64,000 bases of DNA from Haliotis rubra (Eukaryota): assembly GCF_003918875.1 (NCBI RefSeq), contig NW_025765869.1, positions 868,001-932,000 on the forward strand, given 5' to 3'. Made by a program: the position numbers and the translations under genes. This document shows positions 28,850 through 52,000 of this stretch, in pieces. The notes beneath the pieces are model-generated. The model was not told the origin of the DNA. It did no database searches and worked only from the letters and a program-made list of their open reading frames with translations. How positions within the stretch are numbered: position 1 is the stretch's first letter; each line of letters begins with the position of its first letter.

Positions 28850-30292
28850 GCAATGTTTCAATTTCAGCAACATGTAATATACACACTGCATGGGAAATAT
28901 GAACGGAACTAATTCTTGAAAATATCCTAAGATTATTGTGATATACATGATTGTTCTGAACTTTCACTTTTATGTAGTGTTTTGTTTTAAACATATTAAT
29001 TGAATGTGAAATGACACCCCATTTGTAATTTGACAACATTCACTTTCAAAGACAAAGCTGCGATATATAATCACTGCTAACCCATCTTCCGAAGGCAACA
29101 GTGTTTTACTAATATATACCAAAGGCGTTTTTGGGTAAACGGTTGCTTCGAAAGATGTCATCTAAGACCTCTTTCTTTACATCGAATAAACTATTTCGTA
29201 AAAATCTATCTTCCACCGAAGTCCTTAGAACGTTCGTAATATTCAAAATCGACTTTCGGCTGAACAAAACTGTTCATGAATGTATTATGAAGGAGGAATT
29301 CATAGAAAGGTGATGGGCTCACGGGTTCAAACCAATGCACTATTTAAGCCTCCAAACGTTATCTCCCTTTACCTTCGAAAAACGTCGAGAGGACACGCAC
29401 GCATCCTTCTTTGTTGAAGCCATCTGATAAATATATTTGATCACTTCTAGTTTCTTCTACGCCTGTGGTCCGGTTCATGTAAGAGTGACGCTGATCTTTT
29501 GCGTTCACCACTTTTCTTAAAAACCCAAACGTGGGCACAGTGCCTGGAGACCAAGGCTCAGCCATCCAGTTGTTCGTGCTTTGTAAGGGATATCAGCGGG
29601 CGGACTGGTTGTTGCCTTTGTTATTGCTTTTTTTTTTAATCGTGTGAACCAGGATGATGACCCAGAATATTTGATTGGTTCGTGACCTCTGCTGCACCAC
29701 GCATAAGGGCAATCGATATTATTAGGGCGTATCCTCATATTGATCAACAAAGATTAAATAAAGTTTCGTCTTGGAATTAATTGGGAAATAGCCATCTTTG
29801 TATTCCCTTAATATTTCAGATATTTTACAAACCGGCTTCAAACTTTGCCCATCTAGCTTATAATGATAGCCCGATGTACAGAGACCCGCCAGACCCAGAA
29901 CGACATTGAAACGGACAAACCCGAAGTTCTTTCGAATTTCGATGCTTCTATAGTCTCCTAAATGAATATATTTTAGAGACAGCAGCACATTATAAAATTA
30001 AATCAATAAAATATGATGAAATGGAGACTATTCGCTATAAAAAAAATGCAGTAATCTAGGCTTGAAAATACCCTTGGCTTTATTGGATGCGTTTGTTTCA
30101 AGGTCAATATGACAGACTAAATCCCATCGTTCGAACCTCATCGAACCTTGAGTCTTGAAAGTTACATAAAATCGGTCTGTGGCCAGGATGAGTTGGGAAA
30201 ACGAGCCTTGGAATATACATCTGATAACCTAATGATACAAAATCGCATTAACTGTAACATAAATTGTGGTCACTTTAGGCTGTCGAAACCAC

Positions 30293-31351: not shown

Positions 31352-33832
31352 TTTGATACAGTTCATCTGGGACGGATAGACATAGGCTAAGGGCGTTCGC
31401 CTTGCTGTTACAAGGGAAATTGGATCGGTTTCGATAAGGTCACAAAATGTTGAAAAGAATTAAAAAGGCACTACATCACTGTCCCTAAATCTACAACAGT
31501 ATTTTGACACCAACACAAACTGACAACACTGTTATCTGTCCACTCCATTTCCATACATTCTGGAACATATTTCCATATTTAGGAATTCAGTACTTAGCAT
31601 TGTGTAATGTATTATTGCTCTTGGAGTGAGGTTTTTCAAGAAAATAATGAATGGTTTTGCTTAACTGAAACTGTGATCATACCATAAGCTTCCTGAAGAA
31701 ATGTCAACTCACACCACTCATGGTACATTAGCCCTGTGTGCCGTTGTACAGAGCGATCTTAGTGCTAAACTCCCATACCTTAACATAGACTTAAGGTAAT
31801 CTTAGCACTAAGGTTGTTTTGGCGGTATCCAGGTCACATGGCAAGCTTTCATCTACTCCCTGTGTTGATGGCATAAATAATACAAACTGACCGTGAAAAG
31901 AGCCTAAGTGACCCAAGTAATATTTAATTATTACCGAAAGAAATATGTTTTCCTTTGATGTTGTGATTATATATATGTCGAAAAGGGACAAAATTCCTTA
32001 GACATTCTAAATTTGTTTTATTACGAACATTTTACTTCAAAAACGGGTTACATAACACATCATGATGCGTGTTTCATAACGCCTTTCTGTAATTTGATTG
32101 GCTGAGGCTGAAATCATAAAGCTTGACCTTGAGAGGACTAGTTTCATTCACACAAGTTTTTCTTTAAAATTACCTTCATTTATTGCTTCCCAATACAAGA
32201 TTACTTTACTTGAGAATTATTTGCCGTTCTGTTATTGCTGAAATATATACTTGTTAATTAATAAAAGTGCAAAACGGACCGATATATCCCAAACTCTTTA
32301 CATACAGTACGGGAAACAAACTTAATCAATGCGGACATATTCCTTCTGATTTCAAAAACTATATTCAACATAAGACTGAGGTGTTGATTTCCAAAGCTTG
32401 AGTGATATGTGATGAAATGCATGTGGACCAATAACACAGGATAAATGTGTAAGCTTTGTATATGCAATATAACACACACACACGTTCATTTCATATGTAC
32501 ATATATATATTTACAATTGTAAGTAATATTGGGCCAACAGGTCTTATATCTGACAAGGCAGATAAAAATATAATTTGCAAAATAACATCTTTTATACATT
32601 TGCTTTTCTCTGACAATATAATTGAAATTGAAATATTAGATAATTAGGAATCAATTTTCATGCCAGTGTAAAGTAAGTCACCTTGATTGATAATTTTATT
32701 AGTTTAATTTTTGAAAAAATTGAGACAAAATTATTGAAAGATTTGTTTTCAATTATTTGTAAAACGGTATCTGATAAACATGAGATAACGAAACGGTTAA
32801 TGTGAGAGTAGAAACTGCATGAAAGATCTTAAAGTGCACATAACAGGTTGAAATTCATAAAAAAGTGTTCTTGATTCATTTTGCAAAATGGTATAAATAT
32901 AGATTACTAATGCACAACACAAGTACAACAGCTTGATTGTATGATACAAGGTGGAATGTATGCGAGGCATGTACTGAAGTAAATATATATTGATATATAG
33001 GTATGTACACATCAATCACATTCACATCGATATCACAGATAATACAAGAGATACGTCTCTCTTCATTCAATCAAAGGTAGCATCAGTAACAGCACTTAGG
33101 CAATATTGAATTTTAGATTAAAAAATATTACAGTCAAGTATATTTTTGCATATACAATAAATTTATTGTGATTTGAAACTAATAAAAGAATATCAATATT
33201 CATTCCAGAAATATAAAAAGTAATTATTCCAAATATACTTTAGTATAAAATAGAAGTTTTTGGAGGGAAAACATTAAAAAGAAGAATGATATTGATTATC
33301 GTATACCCTTTCATAATAGTTATGATTATGCATGATGGCAGGCAATAAAATATTTCTGTCTTGAAGAAACACAATTCATAACATAGGGAGGTACCATAGT
33401 AACTCTCGTGCAGAAATTCAGAAACAGCTAAGACTGAGTGTTTATTTAACAATGTCAAGCACAAATTTAAAAATCAGTTTTCAGATAAACAAGGCAAATC
33501 ATTTAGCTCTGAGGATCGGATGATATTTCTCATTTCAGGCCATATTCTCAATACCTCCCCTAAAATAAGATTATTGTCATCATGTACAGATGAAAAATAT
33601 TAACACTACTATTGCAGGTGCTCTGTCTGTGCTTATTGTAAAACATCTGTAAGCAATAAAGTTATCTTTTGTAAGTGTTTCACTAATAATGAAGGACCTA
33701 TAAACAAAGATGTTCAGCCTAGACATGGATCTGTAAAAAAACACTGAAAAATATATTTCCAAATGAAACAATGATTTCCAAATAAATTATGAGTTTGAAT
33801 TACAAAAGAGATTTTGAACATCACTTTATCAT

Positions 33833-34033
33833 TTATTTCTTCTTTTTCCCTGCAGGACTTTTCTTTCCTTTAGCACTCTTCCTTCCTTTTGGAGATTTGG
33901 CTTCTTGCTCTGCCCTGGAGGCTGCTTCTTGAGCTGCCAACTCCTCAAGGCGCTTGCGTTCTGCTTCCAAGTACTTCTGTCGGAACACTTCCCGTGGAGC
34001 GTTCACTGCATCTCTTGCTGCATCAAGTGCCGC
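33833..34033 (-). CDS. ADGB: ADGB last exon (AALDAARDAVNAPREVFRQKYLEAERK...KSPAGKKKK*)
   Basis: cccaaag acceptor, TAA stop. Confidence 0.92.
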   Translation of the reverse strand, partial: AALDAARDAVNAPREVFRQKYLEAERKRLEELAAQEAASRAEQEAKSPKGRKSAKGKKSPAGKKKK

Positions 34034-37000
34034 CTTTGGGAGGAAATAAAGAGGAGGGGAAGGGTGAGAGAAGAGGCAGATTGGGGTCGGGAGAGCTGGG
34101 AGGGGTACAGTCATGCAATATGGAGGAAAGGGGGAAGGGGCACAGTAATGAATGTTAGTCTCTATGGAATGTAATATTACAACTTAGTGACACCTTGGGA
34201 GAGGGTATTTGGAAAAGTAGTCCCATAAAACCAGTTGTAGAGTCTTCATGTATGTTTGTATTCAACTTCCACAAGGAACACATGTAAATTGATCATTTTG
34301 TTGATTTAATGACCCAGAAATACAAATCGTAATACAATGAATGAACTTAGCATAAATATTCACGGTAGTTGACATTCATATGCTGGGAATTAGACCCAGT
34401 ATAAGTCGCACATGTGGTCTATGGATATTTTGGTAAAGGAAACATTATTTTAATGATATTTTATATTTTTAACACACACTGTTCAAACCACACAAGGTGA
34501 AGAAAAATCACAACAACTTTCCATGCACAGGTTCACTTTTGCATCCAACAGCCAAGTGGGGTGACACAAAACTAGGAATGACTAATGTGGACATGGATCA
34601 AATGTTCAGGTGGAACTAGTCTATGAACTCGAGCTCAGAATCATGAATCGACTGAACTGAACCACTGCCGAAATCACTAAGCAAGGCCTGCATGGCCAGA
34701 CACTTTCTACGGTGGTTTTCTATAGCAATACGATACGCTTCCCTCGCACTATCCAAGGCAGCCTTTATAAAAACAATTCATCCACATCATTAAGAAGCCA
34801 GTACCTTTCTCCTGATAAGCAACATGTTATGGGGGCAAATGGTCAAACACAACAAAGTACAGATAGCCTTTAACTGACAAAAGACTTGCATTCTAATACA
34901 AGGGTAACAATACTTAATTCAAAGTTCACAATATACTACTCAGAATTTGGTGAGGCCCAAAGTAGTCATCTTTGATCAAATATTAAGTAGTACATAATCT
35001 AATGATTTATAAATAAATACGTGTCATGTATTCTGCAAGGAGACGGTAATTAAACATCCTCTTGACCATAAAACACAAAGATACCAATACATGAGACATG
35101 TGGTGCAGGTGTTATATCGTGCTGGTGATGATTTTCCTCAGTCCATACATTGTTTTATGCCATGAATGTTTACAAGTTTTCAGTTTACTTTACTTTTTAA
35201 CATTTGAAATATTATTCCATTGTCCATCTCACCTGTAGCTCCTCGGCCTGATCAAGCTGCCGGATTTTTGTCAAGTTGCGACTTTGGCGATCTTCCTCTC
35301 TCCATTTCTCGACACATTCACGGAACTGCTTGTATTCCAAGATCTCCTTCTGTCTCTCTTCCAGACGTCGCTGCATCTCATTCTCATCCAAATACTGAGG
35401 ACTGTCCGTCGTTTTCCTGGTAAAAAATAACTCTTGAATGACATTGTGTATTCATATCAAATAAAAAAAATGCCTGTAGTAATTCGATTAAAAAATTACA
35501 ATTTCTGTTGGATTCTTTGCATCTTTGGTGTGTGGCAAGAGATGTGCTATAAAATGGAAGGTGTGTCATCAAGAAATACATCAACAAAAGACGATAATGC
35601 ATTGGAATATGAATTGAAATCAGATTTATAAGGTTTAAAGTACTGCATCATCAAATGCTTACTTTATGAATGGGGTTAGATCTAGCGGCTGCAGGATTTC
35701 TTTCGGTGTGGGTGGGGGTGGTGGCTCCAGAGACAACTCCCCCTCCGGCTGGTCCAGGAAGGAGATGGGGGTTTCACGGGATGTGAGTGGGGCCTCCTCC
35801 CCTGGCTGACCCTCCTCTGTGGATGGGCTCTCCTCCTTGGCTTCATCCCCACCCTCTGGCTGTACTCGGATCATGTGGGTGCTGAGATACTTCAGGCGGG
35901 ACTGCATGGCCTGGTAGTGGACAGGAACATGAGTGAGTGAGTGAGTTTTGTTTTAAGCCGCTTTTAGCAATATTCTAGCAATATCACAGCGGGAGACACC
36001 AGAAATGGGCTTCACACATTATACCCATGTAGGGAATCGAACCGGGTCTCTGGCGTGACGAGCGAACGCTTAAACCACTAGGCTACCCCACCGCTCCACA
36101 GCAACATGAGGTCAGCAATGGAAAGAGTGTGTGAGCGAGTTCAGCCCCATGCCGCTTTTAGCAATAGTCCAGCAATATCACGGCGGGGGACATCAGAAAT
36201 GGGCTTCACACATTGTACCCATGTGGGTAATCAAACCCAGGTCTTTGGTGTGCGAGCGAATGCTTTAACCACTACCCCACCGACCTTTACAATGGAAATA
36301 ATGATGTAATAAAGTCTTGTCATTTTTAAAGTGAATAAATGTTTCCTTACAGCCACAAATAAAATGATAACCCCCCAGCTTACAGGGAATGTCATCGTTT
36401 ATTGTGATATCACAGCATCAGTTATGAAATATCGAGTTTAACCACTAGGCTACCCCACCGCTCCACAGAAAATCAGCAATGGAAAGAGTGTGTTGGGTTC
36501 AGCCCCATGCTTTTTAGCAATAGTCCAACAATAAAACCAGAAATGGGCTTCACACATTGTACCCATCTGGGGAATGGAACCCGGGCCTTCGGCGTGACGA
36601 GCAAATGCTTTAACCACCAGGCTACCCAACAGCCCCTCTTTTCATTTGAAGGCATGGGTTGCTGCAGACCAGTTGAGGCATAGCTTACAATGCAGAATGT
36701 TATTGAATTCTTGATACTGTGGGCTTATCTGACACAAGTATCTTGCAATATTACTTCAATATTGACACAAGGAATCATCATGGCAGTCAAAATAGCGGCA
36801 GCAGCGGCAGATGAAGACAGGCTCTTACCTTGACAGCTCTACCGGGCTCTGCATCTTCCCATGCCTTCTTCAACGCTCGGATCTCATCCGCCCTCTCTGT
36901 GTCCTTTCTTGTCTCTATGTCCTCCTGGAAATAAAGTCACACTATGAAACAGTCATCAGGTATGGATGAGGTAAAGTGGCTTTTAACATTGTGTTCTGGA

Positions 37001-40000: not shown

Positions 40001-43000
40001 GTCTTCAGCTCGACGAGCGGATGCTTTAACCACTAGGCTACCCCACCGCCCTCTCACAAGCCTTGGAGGAATAGAGGATGCATAGGATCACAGCCCACTT
40101 GAAAGATGCAGATCCTGAACAGTGAAATGTGGGCCTTAGACAACTTATCCACCTGCTGAATACACACAAGAGATGACTGAGCCTGTATACTCACAGCTTC
40201 GAGAGCTGGACCTCTTAGCTTCTTGTTCCTCAGGGTTGTAGTCCTTCTGGAAGATGTACGCTGGGATGACGATGTGACCTTTGCCCACTGCGCTGATGAC
40301 CTCTTCTGTGTGGTCAAGGACTGACAGCTTGATATAGACATCAAGTTTGGAAGTGTTGACCTGTAGGCTGCCCAGATGGTCCTCTGTCACCTTTACAGTG
40401 TACCTGGAACACATACACGATACAGTGAGTTAATGGATGCAGTTGAACAGTGCTGTACCCAGCAATACTTCATATTCATCATGGAAGCCTCCACAACAGC
40501 AGCCGCTAGAGGAAAACATGTAGAAACATAAGCCAGAAGATGAAGATGGTTGCAACAGTGTTTTTATCCTAATGGGTACATGTGCATCCATGTTTAAAAA
40601 AACTTGGACCAAATTGATAGCAGAAGCCAAGAGTGAGTGAGTGTATTTTTACGCCACACTCAGCAATATTCCAGCTATATGGCGACGGTCTGTAAATAAT
40701 CGCGTCTGGTCCAGACAATCCAGTGATCAACAGCATGAGCATCGATCTGCACAATTGGGAACCGATGACATATGCCAACCAAGTCAGCCAGCCTGACCAC
40801 CCAATCCCGTTAGTCACCTCTTACGACAAGCATGGGTTGCTGAAGACACATTCTGACCCGGACCTTCACGGGTACAGTAGCCAAGAAAACTCCTTATTAT
40901 CAAATGACATGTTCCACAAGTAGCAGGGCAAGCAATAGGGCATCATTATTTATTTTGTTGTTAGCATATTTATTTTTAGTATAAAAGCAAACACTTTAAT
41001 TATTCCAATAGCAAAAATTATGATACTCATTATGATTAAAAGAAGCATGTACCTGAATATGGTATGTTTGGCATTTGGCAGGTAGTAGTCGCGGATTTCT
41101 TTAACAGTGAAGGAGCTGTTGACCTCCTGGTTGCGGGGGGAAGGGAGGGGACTGAGGGAACCGATCAGACGCATCCTCCAGCTCCCACTCATCATCCCCT
41201 GGTCCAGAGTCCGGGCCTCAGCTACGAATGTGTAGCCCTTCTGTTGACAGTAAGTATGGTGTTGTGTTAACTGAGACCATCTTATTGCACAACTACAAAC
41301 AGATTTACTTGACATGCGATCACTTGGTCTTCCTTTCCTCTTTTCTCAGATAAAGCCTCCATTAACAGATTTTCATTTTCTTGGAAACAAGTTCTATTGT
41401 TCTCCATTGCCAGTTCAATATTGTGAATCTACCATTACACAGTAATGTATAAACAGAAATTAGTTCATCTTGCAAGAACCTATCAACTTTTTATTTCTCA
41501 AATGTTGACACTTACTGAACTAGGGTAGATGATACCAAAGGAAGACATACTAGCATTCTAATCACACATAAAACCCTGAGAATACCAGAAACCACTACGA
41601 GATCATGTATACATGATGTGATTTATCCACCATTGTGATTGCCAACTCAGCAGAGATTACCCCAATTCACGAGTCTACATTCCATGGAGTCTCTACCAAC
41701 TGCTGCTGCTAAAGTTTCCTCCCTCTCTTACCCTGTTTTTCTTGTAGACGTACGGTGCCACCTTCTGGAAGACTCGAGGTATCTCCTCCCCGGTGTCATT
41801 GTTGACGACCCTCAGCATACACGTGTTGATGGGGACATACAGCTTGGGAACAGCCAACATCTCTTCCCTCACGTAAAACACTTCCCTGTTCATAACAAAG
41901 CACTTTTTACAGTTTCCTCTGACAAACGGTAAAGGCAATATTTGAGACAAGAATAAATGATATCTGAAGACACCGTTCAGCATACACGTGTTGATGGGGA
42001 CATACAGCTTGGGAACAGCCAACATCTCTTCCCTCACGTAAAACACTTCCCTGTTCATAACAAAGCACTTTTTACAGTTTCCTCTGACAAACGGTAAAGG
42101 CAACATTTGAGACAAGAATAAATGATATCTGAAGACACCGTTCATACAAATTTTAGCAAGCAGAAATAGGTAGGCAACGGGCATCAGTCTCACCACTGAA
42201 GAGTCTGATCTAAAAGAAATAATGGCCAAACAAAGTACGTATTTTAACCACAGTGTTACCTGACCACCCAGACAGCTGTAGGATTTATTGGTTTTGTCTG
42301 TTTCTTGTTTAATGTCAAACTCAGCAACATTCCAGCTATATGCTGAAGTGTTCAGACCATCCAATGACTAACATCATGACCACTGATCTACACAAGTGGC
42401 TGCAAGAATGAGACATGAGACTTGGAACTAACCTGAAGACTGTGAACCAGGTGTTGGGAGGCTGGTCAGGGTACACCCCCCTGTAATCAGCATAGGATAT
42501 CTTGTTCCACTCGTCCTTGTAGAACGGATATTTGGGCATGATGTCTGGGTCCCTCTTGAACATCTCCCTGTGTGAACGCATCAAGACAGAATATGTTCAT
42601 CACAAACACTGATTACATGTCCATTACAGTAATCTCAAGAAACCTCAAGCTCATTGCTGAAAAGATTTTAAAACATACACCATAAATCTCTGACATGTAC
42701 CTGAACAGATAAAGTCCATTGTCTTCGGCATTGGACTCCAAGATTGACCAGGATTTCTGAAGATCTTCGATAGCTTTCAAGTTCTCGTCAGTTCCTACAA
42801 AACAGTATCAGATTGAACTCAAAACATATCTTCAACCACAGCATTGAAGGTTCTAGAAAGGAATTAAAATGATCAAATGATGACAAATGTCAGAAGTTAG
42901 GAGTCTCAAACAAGAGGGAAACCTCGTTTTCTTAAATAGTCTCATCCCCGAAATGCTCAATTAATTCACAATCAGTTCGTATACTTCTTTTAAAAAATAG

Positions 43001-46000
43001 TTCTCTGGGTAAAAAGTATTGTGTGGCTACACTTTACTGAGTCAATGTCATTATCCAATTCAAAAAATTTCTCAAGGGAAACTTGAGAAGGATTAAGTAA
43101 TTGACAGCAGCACAGCCTGTGAAGATACCTGGTGTGCGAGCAGCCTTCATCTTGCGGACCCAGGCACCTCGGTGAGCCTTCTGAAGCTTCACTGCTGCCA
43201 CATGTTCATCGGGGGTTGGCTCTCTGTCAAACACGCAACATGGACTTGAATATTGACAAACGTAAAACTTGACAATTGAAACATCCAAATCAGAACAATT
43301 GGGGGTAACTTTTGACTTGCTGGAAAACTTAAGTTACAGAAAACTTTGAAATATTGTCATCAATTACCACAGATGTTAAAGCAGATGACATCTAGCCAGT
43401 TTCTTACACACGCAAGTTTTGGACTTCTGACATGATCAAGTTCATAAGAATGAATAAACTTATTGAAAAAGGCTGATTCGAATTCAAATACAATTTCAAC
43501 TAATCTTTAGTCAAGGAATTGCTTGTGATATTGCCTGTGTTTATCTACATTTCTTACAATCAACTCTTGTCAATGACTGGCTCATGTTTAAACATTACAT
43601 AAACACATCTATAAAACCATTATTCTGACATATTTTAGCACAACCCACACAATATAACATTCTTAGAAGTCAAAAACAAACTGTCTTTCATACGAACATA
43701 TCATTCTGATAACTAGTTTTAAAATACTAACTTAACTAGACTTAACATTATGCAGAGTTTGAGGGATAAGGAGGGCATATATTAAAATGAGAAGCATATT
43801 TTCTAGCATCTCTGTCAAGGAAGGTGAAACTAGATGAACAAACTCACCTGTTAGCCCACGTGTTCTCCACTTTCTCTGGTTCACCTACACAAGAAAGACA
43901 GAAACACCTGAACACTAGTACATGGTACATCACAGATGTATCAAACTAAAATATCACGATCAAAGTAATACCACATGCATCTCTCTCAGCTGACAAGCAC
44001 AGAATCACAACTTTCATTTCAGACAATCCCATCATATAGCATACAGTCACACCTTGTTTCAGAAGCACATGAATACATTGTACACCACAGATGGAAGAAA
44101 CTGAAACATCGCATTCAAAATACTAGCAGATGCATTTCTCAGCTGACAAGCATCTATTCACCAGTTTCATTTCAAACAATCCAATAAAAATGGAACATCG
44201 TTAATGTGGATAGTTTAAATCCACAAATCCCAGATACTAGAAAATTATTGTTTTAAACGTCGGTCTCAACTGGAGGGATAGGGGTTTATCTGGAACTGCT
44301 TTGGAAGAAATTAAGTCTCCAATGTACAGCAAATATCAGTAACATTCTCAACTTGGATAATGGTGAGGTGAGGTGAAAGTGGGTTTTACGTCGTTCTTGA
44401 GAATATTTCGCTCATATGACGACGTGCATGCATGTGTATGTGTATGTGCGCCTGCTTGTACTAGCCCAGACTTAGGCTGGTTTTATAGTGCTAGCCCACT
44501 GAGATACCATGCCGCAGTGAAGCATGAATACCCCACTCAGACACATTATACGGACTCCGAGCCGACCAGTCCTTGTTGTACCCATTAATGCCGAGCGCAA
44601 GACAGGGACCAACAAGTACCATATTTTAACGTCTTTTGGTATGACGCGGTCGGGGATCGAACCCGCGACCTTCCGCTCTCTGGGCGGACGCTCTAACCAC
44701 TACACCACGAAGGCGGTCTGGATAATGGTAACATACAGTCAAATCCCGATGAGTCGAATCGCTGGGGACCAAGTAATAAATTCGACTTATCGATGTATTC
44801 GAGACATAGATATGTCTATGAGGGTAGAAAAAAAGATGATCCAGTCCTAATTCCTCCACCTAAGCATTTGTTTACCAAATGATTTCCCTATCACTAATAG
44901 GGGCACCTTATCAGTTCCAGTCTGATTAGCACAGACAGTGATTTCCGTAAATCACTAATCTGCCTTTTTGAACTCATCCGTCAATGGCGGAAAGGTGTGA
45001 GCCGCGCTGGTTTGTTAATTGGATCAGTTTGCTACACCAATCAACTTCTCATTGACTGACTTTGGCTTATGTATACAAGATTACTGTTGTTTGAATCTCA
45101 TGGGACCAGATCTCCTTCTCGAGTCATCGTGTGTATTTATGAGACGACTTCGTGTAACCGGAAATCAAATGATGACAACTATAACAGGGAATGGTTGAGA
45201 CCGACAGGTACTTCGAGTTATGGATAATATTCGAGACACTGGCATTCGACTCATCGGGATTTGACTGTAGTTGAAACATATCTCACATATACACAGGTGA
45301 GGTGTAGTTTACTGATGCCAGGATCAATAACAAGGAAGGGGCATTATTGTATTGGTTACAATGTAATATTCAAAATTAGGACATAAAACATTCCACATTT
45401 TCAAATTACCTATTTCCTTGAAAATGCCTGCCAAGGGCACATAATTTGGAATCCTAGAAAAATTTCTTAGCTGTGTACAAATGATTTGTGTATAGGGCAA
45501 CTCATTAATCTGACTAATTGCAACAAGAAATGGTCCCTTCCAGATTGAAAATGTTTCATTTTAAGACTTCTGTTTGTCAGTGCTCCCACTGTTGGACATA
45601 TAGACACATTGTATCAGCATGTGAGGAAACAAACCCAGGGTCTGCCTAACTTCATACCAGATTCTAAATTTGTAATTCAGGTTACTTGGAAGATCATGAA
45701 CTATCTTCTTTTCAAAAAAGTATAACTGTATAACTATATTTAGCATCAGCTGGTTTTACTGACATTCTAAGTCGGTGACACATAAACAGCAAGGTGATAA
45801 TGTGTGCAATAGTTGTAACTCTGTGGCATGTGTTTATATTGTTGGATATGACCACTTATAAAACATGTAAGAAGCCTGAGTGAATTAAGAAAGACTGAAT
45901 TGCTTAACAGAATGTATGTATTGCCAAACAATAATCTCCATTCTATAAGACTGATATCCTCTGGTCTAAGGCAATATAAAGATTAGAAACATTTCATGTC

Positions 46001-49000: not shown

Positions 49001-52000
49001 TTCGTTAATAGAATCTTTAATCACAAGAAAAGGCTGTGTTTCTGATCGACAAAAAACTCACAACTATGTTTCATAAACATTACATAAAAATAATACCAGT
49101 TGGATTGCTTTAATGTCAATTAACTCATTTATGACTATTATCCTTCCCTCAACTAATAATAAACATTCTAGAAATGACACATTTTTGTAAAACAGCAAAT
49201 TTTGCTAGAAATTGATGAAGCACACAACGAAATTTTCTACTTCATTGATTGAAAAAAATGCATACGTTTCAAGGTTGTGTTGGGAACCAGTTCTTCAGAG
49301 GCACCTAGAAAATGTTGTCAGTTTTTGAGATAACTCTCATAATTTCAAAATAACACAAGCTCTAAAGTCTGATGAAAAAGCCAAATGGAGATGCAAGTTT
49401 GACAGCAGGAAAAAGTCGTCGCATTGCTTTGTTATTGTCAAAAATGTTTTAACGTATTGTACCAAGCCTAATTCAGTTTCATAAGTCACATGTACAACAA
49501 TTATTATTACCGAGTCCAATCTTGTATAATTTGATGATATTTCAGGCACCAACAGGTTTGACAGAAGATCCAACTTTGTGAGTCTAGTTTCGAAGCCAAA
49601 TATAAAGTACTGATCAAGCTTAATGCTCATAGTAATACCTGAGGAATTAAGAAGATGGATTGGAGTCGGACTGAATCAGATTCTGATAATATCAATCCAA
49701 CAAAGTATTTTTCTTTGATGCTAGTCTGTTTAACGGCTTTAATGTTGATGTGACATTAAATATTAACTGGCTCTTTCACAAAAAGAAATTTGAGTCACAA
49801 ATTACAGATTTTGAAAAAATGAAAATCATAAATGGTTGCCTTATGAATATAAATAGTTACTTTTCCTCAAGATGAGGCATGCATTCAGGGCAGAAAACAA
49901 AACTCATGTCACAATGTCAAAGGTCAAATGTCATGAGAGGTCAAGTGTCACATGAGGTCAAGAGTCAAGACAGTTGTTCACATGTCATGAGGCATGTTGA
50001 GTTCAGCCACCAACCTGGTCGACTTCCCACGGTAAGACCCAGGATGTTGGGAGATGTGGCATCATAATTGAGAACCCTCCACGCAAATGCCATATCAGAG
50101 GAGATAACGTCTTTCAGTGCTCTCTTCAGCATGCTGTATAGAGACTCATTAAACACCTGAAATAGGAAACAATCATACAATCAGAGCTAATCATAGTGCT
50201 ATACTGACCCAATTGCCATAAACATTTCAACTTGAGTTTGTTGGTTGGTTAGTTGTTTTACTCCACACTAAGCAGTATTGCAGCTATATGGCATCCTCGA
50301 TAATCTCCAGGGCATACGTTACTCTAACTCTCCACTATACCCTGGTTGCATCCACGGCTTGGGGCGATGATTTTATTACCTCCCTTGGCTGGCTTTTTGT
50401 CCAATCAGGTGCCTACGCTGGAAATTGAGCGAACCAATCACAACTCACTTTCGCTACTCAAATTATCGAACCGTTTAAACTTGGCAACACAATTGATGCA
50501 GAGGTACTCTGAAAGAAGTAGAAGGAGTTCTTTCATATAGTTTTTAAAGTTTCACATCTGAGAATTTGTCTTTATTATTTCCCCAAAAATCTGTGTGGCA
50601 CTGCGAACAAACTTTCGCGACTGCGACTGCTATCTTTGTTGACACTGGCAACCTCAGCTGTAACGGCGGCTTAGCTGATTGGCTACTGTGAGAATGCGGA
50701 GCCAGCCAAGGGAGGTAATAAACTCATCGCCCCAAGCCGTGGATGCATCCAGGGTATAGTGGAGAGTGATCGTAACGTATACCCTGGAGATTATCGAGGA
50801 TGCTATATGGCAGTGGTCTGTAATACTTGAGTCTGGACCAGATAATCCAGAGATCAACAGCATGAGCATGGACCTCACGCAACTGGGATACGATGACATA
50901 TTTCAGCCATGACAGCGAGCCTGACCACCTGATCTCGGTAGTCGCCTTTTACGACAATCATGGGTTGCTGAACACCAATTCTAGCCCGAATCTTCAAGGG
51001 TACTAGAATATGTAATTAATGTGTAACAATTCCTACCAGGGCATGGACAAAGGTTAAGTTAATTACAACAATTCTGACTGAGTATTGTCACTTTTGGTTT
51101 CATGCTGTTTGGCAAGTTAGTTCCAATTGCACCAATGAGGCACAAGGCATTATGATGTCACATGAAATCATTGTAGCAAATAACTGAAGATTATGTTGTC
51201 CGTTGTACATGTTTCATAATGATCTTATTGTACTATCAATAAGCCATTGGAGCTGCCTTACCTGGACATCAGGAAATGCACAATTTCCATAGTTCCTATG
51301 AAAAATATCTAAGATAAGAATAACCTGTTCGCAACACAGATTTAAGAAATACTTGAAGCTCATGAATTAATGTATTATTTTGGCATGAGTAAGAAGTCAG
51401 TGCCTCATGAAGCAAAATTCCACAAGAGACATGGTGTCTCAAGAAGAATAAAATTCTGCAAGAAGAATATTGCGTCAGGAAGTTTAATGCCTCAAGAAGC
51501 ATATTGACTCAGGAAGTGTAATTCCTCAAGAAGAAAAGTGCCTCTGGAAGTATAATTCTTCAAGAACACCTACCTGGAAGTGGCGAGTCTTTGACAGGAG
51601 CTTGTCGTTGCGGTACGGACAGTGACTGCTGACAAGCTCCTCCCATGCCTGTCGGAACATCTCCGTGTCACCCAGGTTGTTGATGCATTTGCCAAGATTT
51701 GTGATTACTTGTACTGCGTTGTCACGGAAACGACAACTTTCCTGAAATGTTTTTTGTCAAATACATGAGTTTAAGAATTTGCCAAATGAAATGGCAGAGA
51801 AACTGCATGATTTCTATGAATTTAAAGAAAAATTATTACCTAGAAATAATTATATGCTTTATGACTCTTACTGGTAGTAAAACAGATAAGGAAAGATGCC
51901 AAAACAAAATATGACATTAGCTCCTTTCACCTTTAGCTTCAATGACTTGATAGGTTAACGAGGTTAAAAGAATTAAAGCAGGTGAAACAAAGGATGAAGA

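What the first reader, a model, noticed from the sequence alone, without database searches (positions are those of the whole stretch)
33833..34762. Androglobin appears to have two paralogous alternative last exons giving a basic or an acidic tail
Seen: inside the last intron, 34762-34616 (-) has a phase-0 acceptor (ttttataaag|GCT) and a stop-free 48-aa frame AALDSAREAYRIAIENHRRKCLAMQALLSDFGSGSVQSIHDSELEFID*. It is homologous at the start to the distal last exon AALDAARDAVNAPREVFRQKYLEAE.... The shared residues use different codons (gct gcc ttg vs gcg gca ctt), which points to an old duplication conserved at protein level. A possible ATTAAA lies at 34454-34449. Established (from memory): vertebrate ADGB ends in the Lys-rich tail matching the distal exon. 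Inference: alternative last-exon choice swaps an NLS- or microtubule-binding-like basic tail (KSPKGRKSAKGKKSPAGKKKK) for a short acidic one. I know of no such isoform switch described for androglobin. The exon is too short for the ORF track.
Basis: partly seen in the sequence, partly recalled or inferred. Interest (0 to 1): 0.78.

Follow-up and report, generated by a model that had tools for sequence, protein, structure and literature searches.

The report
Conserved alternative tail exon of androglobin
Inside the last intron of an abalone androglobin gene sits an old second copy of the last exon that has stayed protein-coding in abalones, a deep-sea snail and a limpet, so the protein very probably exists with either a basic or an acidic end, although the abalone RNA I could read showed only the basic form.

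Summary
At 34762-34616 (-), directly behind an AG, a 48-codon frame ends in TAG. It is homologous to the start of the true last exon (34033-33833): its score of 42 beat the best score (29) from 1000 randomised introns. The gene is androglobin of an abalone (Haliotis rubra or a near relative).

The exon is not a decaying relic. In H. asinina it is 146/147 nt identical, against 93-97% for neighbouring exons and 70-90% for the intron. The same exon lies in the last androglobin intron of Gigantopelta aegis and Patella caerulea: same phase, AG acceptor, 48-50 codons, TAG stop, and a conserved end motif SIHxSELxFI(D/E). Changes there concentrate at third codon positions.

Oysters carry an exon at the same position and phase. 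RefSeq models of Crassostrea virginica (X11) and Ostrea edulis (X9) splice it to the upstream exon.

Direct use in abalone was not seen. Spliced contigs of four RNA runs (three abalone organisms) all join 35233 to 34033, and contigs covering the proximal exon run unspliced through its acceptor. No abalone, limpet or Gigantopelta model I saw has this tail. The proposed ATTAAA is not conserved.

Verdict: a real, ancient alternative C-terminal exon, likely minor or tissue-specific. It is a new member of a known kind.

The parts
35663..35910 (-). constitutive androglobin exon, third from the end
   Evidence: Spliced RNA contigs in 4 runs show joint 35415|35662 (cut +1). Borders were read.
35233..35416 (-). 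constitutive exon upstream of both tail exons (…KIRQLDQAEELQ); it ends in phase 0 with donor GTGAGA
   Evidence: Joints. 100% protein identity to H. rubra XP_046565422.1.
34034..35232 (-). last annotated intron (1199 nt), which contains the proximal exon
   Evidence: Joint 34032|35232 (cut +1, CT..AC) in one spliced contig in each of 4 RNA runs.
34763..34800 (-). acceptor region of the proximal exon (…gaattgtttttataaAG); weak pyrimidine tract (0.5 against 0.9 for the distal acceptor)
   Evidence: The AG is conserved in H. asinina, Gigantopelta and Patella.
34616..34762 (-). proximal alternative tail exon, coding part: 48 codons plus TAG, acidic end SVQSIHDSELEFID
   Evidence: 146/147 nt identical in H. 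asinina. Orthologues at L002:83924-84067 and L003:43962-44111. Coding pattern of substitutions.
34470..34615 (-). conserved flank after the stop (96-98% identical to H. asinina); presumed 3'UTR or regulatory sequence of the proximal exon
   Evidence: No Rfam match and no unusual fold.
34449..34454 (-). ATTAAA hexamer proposed as the poly(A) signal; not conserved
   Evidence: Position. It is ATTAAG in H. asinina. RNA contig X26 record 8 runs on to 34352 and beyond.
33833..34033 (-). distal (canonical) last exon, coding part: 66 codons plus TAA, Lys-rich tail KSPKGRKSAKGKKSPAGKKKK
   Evidence: Used in all spliced contigs. This tail type is conserved from molluscs to vertebrates.

Best explanation
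The 147-nt element at 34762-34616 (-) is a functional, ancient alternative C-terminal coding exon of androglobin. It arose as a tandem duplicate of the 5' part of the last exon.

When the phase-0 donor at 35233 is joined to the acceptor at 34762 instead of 34033, the protein keeps the first roughly 22 residues of the terminal helix in diverged form (A-LD--RE-Y--A---RRK-L). It loses the coiled-coil stretch and the Lys-rich tail (net charge +10 over the last 20 residues). It ends instead in a short acidic peptide, …SVQSIHDSELEFID (net -5).

Shown: homology of the two exons; conservation of acceptor, phase, length, stop and amino-acid sequence across three deep gastropod lineages; use of the positional counterpart in oyster gene models.

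Inferred: that abalones splice it, probably at a low level or in particular tissues or stages (its acceptor has a weak pyrimidine tract); that it ends the transcript; and that swapping a basic for an acidic tail changes partners or localisation.
For: - Register-locked similarity to the distal exon: score 42, against a maximum of 29 in 1000 random introns.
- H. asinina: 48/48 aa and 146/147 nt identical, the one change synonymous. Neighbouring exons are 93-97% and the intron 70-90% identical.
- Gigantopelta aegis L002:83924-84067 (tblastn E 2.6e-14) and Patella caerulea L003:43962-44111 (E 3.9e-9) both lie inside the last ADGB intron. Each sits behind an AG with a pyrimidine tract, in phase 0, with 48 or 50 codons and a TAG stop.
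- Differences by codon position are 12/12/28 and 18/15/32. pN is 0.26-0.37, against a saturated pS of 0.74-0.78.
- Oyster Saccostrea L006:29928 has an AG-preceded phase-0 frame, DFLDQARQAIAQAYQSIRAKH…, in the last intron (0 of 500 random introns reach its score).
- RefSeq isoforms XP_078322765.1 (C. virginica X11) and XP_056013791.1 (O. edulis X9) continue from …CEELQ into exactly this exon.
Against: - In four RNA runs (abalone organisms A, B and H), the only joint from 35233 goes to 34033, at depths 5.6-33.
- Contigs covering the proximal exon (X26 record 8, 34352-34799; X5 record 20, 34589-34947; depths 3-5) run colinear with the genome through the acceptor, that is, unspliced.
- None of the roughly 25 abalone, Gigantopelta and Patella protein models seen carries this tail.
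- Two word searches for short protein fragments with the tail or the junction found nothing.
- No conserved canonical poly(A) hexamer follows the stop.
- Contigs drop rare variants, the tissues of the runs are unknown to me, and the runs were chosen for holding the stretch.
Confidence: 0.8

Rival explanations
1. The exon codes the same alternative tail but is not terminal. It is a stop-containing cassette exon spliced on to the distal exon, which then serves as 3'UTR. This gives either a truncated-tail protein or a transcript marked for decay (a regulatory 'poison' exon).
For: No conserved AATAAA or ATTAAA lies within the conserved flank, and ATTAAA at 34454 is ATTAAG in H. asinina. Synonymous sites and 150 nt after the stop are unusually conserved within Haliotis: dS is 0.033, against 0.18-0.21 in neighbouring exons. 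That pattern is typical of regulated exons.
Against: I saw no strong conserved donor after the stop (reading). Contig X26 record 8 reads through every candidate donor to 34352. Amino-acid-level conservation over very deep splits argues that the peptide itself matters, not just a stop codon.
Confidence: 0.22
2. It is a conserved non-coding element (splicing or polyadenylation regulator, enhancer, intronic RNA) whose open frame is incidental.
For: The nucleotide-level conservation in Haliotis exceeds that of real exons and extends about 150 nt beyond the stop. RNA contigs cover it unspliced.
Against: Between Haliotis, Gigantopelta and Patella the DNA is saturated at third positions while the protein, the frame length and the stop are kept. 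There is no Rfam family, no stable fold (z +1.59) and no long inverted repeats. Oyster models translate the counterpart.
Confidence: 0.06
3. It is a dead relic of a tandem exon duplication, or a chance open frame.
For: The frame beyond the homologous 22 codons is only 26 codons long, which alone is not surprising.
Against: Chance is excluded. Neutral decay is excluded by 146/147 nt identity where the intron is 70-90% identical, and by an intact 48-50-codon frame in four species of three deep gastropod lineages.
Confidence: 0.02

Closest known systems
Alternative last exons (alternative 3'-terminal exons that give C-terminal protein isoforms)
   Same: One donor (35233) has a choice of two acceptors (34762 or 34033). 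Each exon has its own stop codon, and the two tails have different charge.
   Different: A separate poly(A) site for the proximal exon is not shown. In abalone RNA contigs only the distal choice was seen.
Alternative exons born by tandem exon duplication (Kondrashov and Koonin 2001; Letunic et al. 2002; cited from memory)
   Same: The two exons are adjacent, start in the same phase and are homologous over their first 22 codons.
   Different: Only the 5' part is homologous. The proximal copy acquired an unrelated, conserved acidic end and a stop, so this is an alternative-terminus pair rather than a mutually exclusive internal pair.
RefSeq androglobin-like isoform X11 of Crassostrea virginica (XP_078322765.1) and X9 of Ostrea edulis (XP_056013791.1)
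   Same: The upstream exon …CEELQ is joined in phase 0 to an exon inside the last intron. That exon begins D-LD--R------AYQ-IRA-H and replaces the Lys-rich tail.
   Different: The second half of the oyster exon (…LVEGSGLTPSGVP, …QVNGPPTTQSGVLEQPT) is unrelated to the gastropod SIHDSELEFID end and is not acidic. Gastropod and oyster proximal exons are each closer to the canonical exon than to each other, so shared origin and parallel duplication cannot be told apart.
Canonical androglobin C-terminus (vertebrates to molluscs)
   Same: The distal exon encodes it: LD-AR--V--PREAFRQKYLEAE… followed by a KSPKGRKSAKGKK-type end. It was present in nearly all full-length androglobins fetched.
   Different: The proximal tail lacks the PRE motif, the coiled-coil stretch and the Lys-rich end. 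The papers read call the C-terminal region uncharacterised and mention no alternative tail.

Membership tests
Androglobin (ADGB) gene | Androglobin-specific domains IV and V | tested here: met
   Pfam PF22069 scores 43.8 bits and PF22070 scores 44.9 bits (cut-off 27) on exon translations at 40953-41345 and 40148-40429.
Androglobin (ADGB) gene | Orthology to annotated androglobins | tested here: met
   The last two exons are 100% identical in protein to H. rubra XP_046565422.1 and 98-100% to H. asinina. 140 representatives were found with one exon.
Androglobin (ADGB) gene | Permuted globin domain with embedded IQ motif | tested here: inconclusive
   Pfam Globin scores 20.1 bits on 51529-51756, below the cut-off of 22. 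An IQ-like stretch (AVKLQKAHRGAWVRKMK, 43037-43333) was seen by eye only.
Alternative last exon | Usable 3' splice site in the phase of the upstream donor | tested here: met
   An AG directly precedes the frame in Haliotis (two species), Gigantopelta, Patella and Saccostrea. The upstream exon ends in phase 0 in all of them.
Alternative last exon | RNA molecules that join the upstream exon to it | tested here: inconclusive
   Not found in contigs of four abalone RNA runs, where all joints go to 34033. Present in oyster RefSeq protein models. Contigs cannot show absence.
Alternative last exon | Own conserved stop codon and protein-level constraint | tested here: met
   TAG after 48-50 codons in four species. 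pN is 0.26-0.37, against a saturated pS. Third-position excess of substitutions.
Alternative last exon | Own cleavage and polyadenylation site | tested here: inconclusive
   The only hexamer within 300 nt (ATTAAA, 34454) is not conserved in H. asinina. One contig reads through it. Transcript ends cannot be seen in contigs.
Tandem-duplicated exon pair | Sequence homology beyond chance, same phase, adjacency | tested here: met
   Score 42, against a maximum of 29 in 1000 random introns. Both exons start behind aaAG|GC in phase 0, 729 nt apart.

The most novel reading that the evidence does not exclude
Molluscan androglobin has carried a two-tail switch since before gastropods and bivalves split. 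A basic Lys-rich end and a non-basic end (acidic SIHDSELEFID in gastropods) would direct this cilia- and sperm-associated chimeric globin to different partners or compartments. This would be an isoform layer that vertebrate-centred work on androglobin has not seen.
Probability: 0.3. Interest if true: 0.65.

Novelty: new member of a known kind. Interest (0 to 1): 0.52.

Why it matters
The roughly 700-residue C-terminal region of androglobin is still called uncharacterised. An alternative C-terminus that has been kept for the whole history of gastropods points to two functionally distinct ends of the protein. It also yields a short, conserved, testable motif (S-x-S-V/C-Q/H-S-I-H-x-S-E-L-x-F-I-D/E).

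The exon appears to be missing from the abalone, limpet and Gigantopelta gene models I saw, so those annotations are probably incomplete.

More generally, it is a clean example of a tandemly duplicated terminal exon turned into an alternative protein end. Its evolutionary age can be read from intron sequence alone.

Tried and rejected
- **RNA contigs of four runs.** They showed only the distal junction. The table of differences was cut, so substitutions in the proximal exon of organisms A, B and H could not be read.
- **Genomic DNA of other species.** DNA for H. rufescens, H. cracherodii and Solemya could not be fetched because the gene range exceeds 100 kb. The products of Patella P0005, Mizuhopecten and Nucella were not on record.
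- **Word search with the alignment of three proximal peptides** (candidates of 29-92 aa): nothing.
- **Word search with the upstream exon** for short junction-spanning fragments: nothing.
- **Aplysia and Lingula last introns.** No homologue was found (best profile scores 3.3 and 1.7 bits; register-locked scores within the random range).
- **Non-coding RNA reading.** No Rfam hit, fold z +1.59, no meaningful inverted repeats.
- **Pfam on both tails:** nothing.
- **Orthology of the oyster and gastropod proximal exons.** This could not be settled from 22 residues.
- **Motif resemblances** (FFAT-like, LIR, PDZ ligand). I considered them from memory for the acidic end and dropped them as unsupported.

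Full report
**What is in the sequence.** On the minus strand the androglobin exon ...KIRQLDQAEELQ ends at 35233, followed by GTGAGA. Inside the following 1199-nt intron, directly behind ttttataaAG, a frame opens at 34762 and runs 48 codons to TAG at 34618-34616. A stop lies only five codons upstream of the AG, so the frame can only be entered by splicing. The canonical last exon starts at 34033 behind cccaaAG and encodes 66 residues ending in KSPKGRKSAKGKKSPAGKKKK. ATTAAA is at 34454-34449.

**Gene and organism.** Exon translations hit Pfam Androglobin_IV (43.8 bits) and Androglobin_V (44.9 bits; cut-off 27). The last two exons are 100% identical in protein to Haliotis rubra XP_046565422.1, 98-100% to H. 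asinina and 90-95% to H. rufescens and H. cracherodii. The window is therefore from an abalone, H. rubra or something very close to it.

**Is the similarity more than chance?** BLASTP gives 11/22 identities, E 0.002. Scored without gaps and in register with the exon start, the site at 34762 scores 42. The next best position in the intron scores 6. In 1000 introns resampled with the same dinucleotide make-up, the mean of the maxima was 6.2 (sd 4.6) and the highest value was 29. The two exons are homologous.

**RNA.** Two run searches found transcriptome-sized runs of several abalone organisms. I laid contigs of four of them (organisms A, B twice, H) on 33300-36100.
- Each run has one spliced contig with joints 35415|35662 and 34032|35232 (GT..AG on the minus strand), at depths 5.6, 9.9, 31.9 and 33.1. 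These are RNA runs, and the distal exon is the one used.
- No joint to 34762 was listed.
- The contigs that cover the proximal exon run colinear with the genome across its acceptor: X26 record 8 (34352-34799, depth 4.8) and X5 record 20 (34589-34947, depth 3.1). X29 record 14 covers only 34474-34608.
- These look like unspliced precursor RNA. Because the runs were selected for holding this stretch, the fact that they cover it means nothing.
- Contigs drop rare variants, so this shows that the proximal junction is at best rare in these samples. It does not show that the junction is absent.

**Conservation, the decisive evidence.** The genomic locus of H. asinina (L001) carries the exon at L001:62483-62626 with 48/48 identical residues.
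- At DNA level the exon is 146/147 identical, and the single change is synonymous (ATT to ATA).
- The three neighbouring real exons are 93.2%, 96.7% and 96.0% identical. The rest of the intron is 70-90%. The 150 nt after the stop are 96-98%.
- Synonymous divergence is 0.033 in the proximal exon, against 0.175 and 0.208 in its neighbours.

The exon is also present far outside abalones, inside the last androglobin intron.
- Gigantopelta aegis, L002:83924-84067: AALDQYREEYNAAVAKYRRNCITVQDFLNDFESNSVQSIHSSELLFID.
- Patella caerulea, L003:43962-44111: AILDKSRENYNQAMKKYRRKHLHLAAIIKDLISESDSCHSIHDSELAFIE.
- Each lies behind an AG with a good pyrimidine tract, in phase 0, with 48 or 50 codons and a TAG stop.
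- Differences fall 12/12/28 and 18/15/32 on codon positions 1/2/3. pN is 0.26-0.37 while pS is saturated at 0.74-0.78. The upstream constitutive exon has pN 0.21-0.23.

This is the signature of a translated exon kept by selection through the deepest splits of gastropods. Those splits are hundreds of millions of years old by general knowledge; I did not date them here. A neutral relic or a purely non-coding element cannot produce this pattern.

**Oysters.** The last intron of Saccostrea cucullata (L006) has an AG-preceded phase-0 frame at 29928: DFLDQARQAIAQAYQSIRAKHQDNKASMEVSEPAT, then a stop. Its register-locked score against the gastropod proximal exons is 22.7, reached by 0 of 500 random introns.

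Among 137 further RefSeq isoforms listed from ten clusters, two end in exactly this kind of tail:
- C. virginica X11 (XP_078322765.1): ...CEELQ|DRLDQHRHLVALAYQSIRAKHLVEGSGLTPSGVP.
- O. edulis X9 (XP_056013791.1): ...CEELQ|DCLDKDRHLISLAYQTIRANHQVNGPPTTQSGVLEQPT.

Their tails align to L006:29928 from the first residue after the upstream exon. So in oysters the choice between a proximal and a distal tail exon is already in public gene models.

Whether the oyster and gastropod proximal exons share one origin is open. Over the 22 comparable residues each is closer to the slowly evolving canonical exon than to the other. Both a single old duplication with fast-evolving copies and two parallel duplications predict this. 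The last introns of Aplysia and Lingula hold no recognisable copy.

**Annotation and literature.**
- All abalone isoforms I could see end in the Lys-rich tail: 15 of the 23 members of the H. rufescens/H. cracherodii cluster, four H. asinina and one H. rubra. So do both Gigantopelta models, three Patella caerulea models and the Lottia model.
- None of the 402 fetched proteins matches the gastropod proximal profile outside the canonical tail position.
- Two paper searches, a globin review and a 2026 preprint mention no alternative C-terminus. They describe the C-terminal region as uncharacterised.

**How it most likely works.** The donor at 35233 can pair with either acceptor. The proximal acceptor in abalone has a poor pyrimidine tract (0.5, against 0.9 for the distal one). 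That fits a minor or regulated choice. Extra conservation of synonymous sites and of the flank after the stop is also commonly seen around regulated exons (general knowledge).

The product keeps a diverged copy of the first helix turns (A-LD--RE-Y--A---RRK-L). It drops the EAERKRLEELAAQEAA coiled-coil stretch and the Lys-rich end (+10 over the last 20 residues). It ends in an acidic, Ser-rich peptide (-5) whose last 12 residues are nearly invariant from limpet to abalone. What the two ends bind is not known.

**What remains open.**
- Whether the exon is truly terminal. No canonical hexamer lies in the conserved flank. One RNA contig reads at least 260 nt past the stop. A stop-containing cassette exon is therefore a live variant.
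- The non-coding readings gained no support: no Rfam match, fold z +1.59 and no long inverted repeats.

**Verdict.** The finding is a real, ancient, apparently unannotated (in gastropod models) alternative tail exon. It belongs to a well-known class, alternative terminal exons born by tandem exon duplication. A counterpart is already modelled in oysters. Interest is moderate.

Noticed in passing
window 35930-36094: A very abundant short interspersed repeat lies in the intron above exon 35663-35910. Summed RNA contig depth there reaches 1e5-9e5, with many 'goes back' joints. The same frame (...GSLVVKA-ARHAEDPGSIPHMGT-CEAHFW...) recurs more than ten times across the window.
   Followed up: no
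L002:84131-84200 (Gigantopelta aegis): A partial second copy of the C-terminal half of the proximal exon (SNDFKSYSIQPIHFSEL, 17.6 bits) lies about 60 nt after the stop of the first copy. It looks like a small local re-duplication.
   Followed up: partly
window 34790 and 35183: Two RNA contigs of organism A (X1 records 3 and 4) leave the window sequence at these points and continue for 351 and 162 nt unlike the stretch. Neither point has splice signals. An insertion polymorphism or a chimeric contig is possible; the cause is unexplained.
   Followed up: no
L001:60359-63203 (H. asinina) against window 34034-35232: The last intron is 2845 nt in H. asinina and 1199 nt here. All the extra DNA lies between the donor and the proximal exon. 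The distance from the proximal stop to the distal exon is nearly the same (574 against 582 nt).
   Followed up: partly
window 33737-33832 and below: The 3'UTR of the canonical transcript is long. Spliced contigs of organisms B and H continue 446-2218 nt beyond the point (33737-33739) where they stop matching the window. Identity to H. asinina falls to 66-72% right after the TAA.
   Followed up: no
P0177 (Mizuhopecten yessoensis 'Androglobin', 1846 aa): This model reads on past the Lys-rich tail (...KSPGGGGRKSELTVHMKRHDSKWKLDNYDT). It is probably a gene-model run-on rather than a third kind of tail.
   Followed up: no
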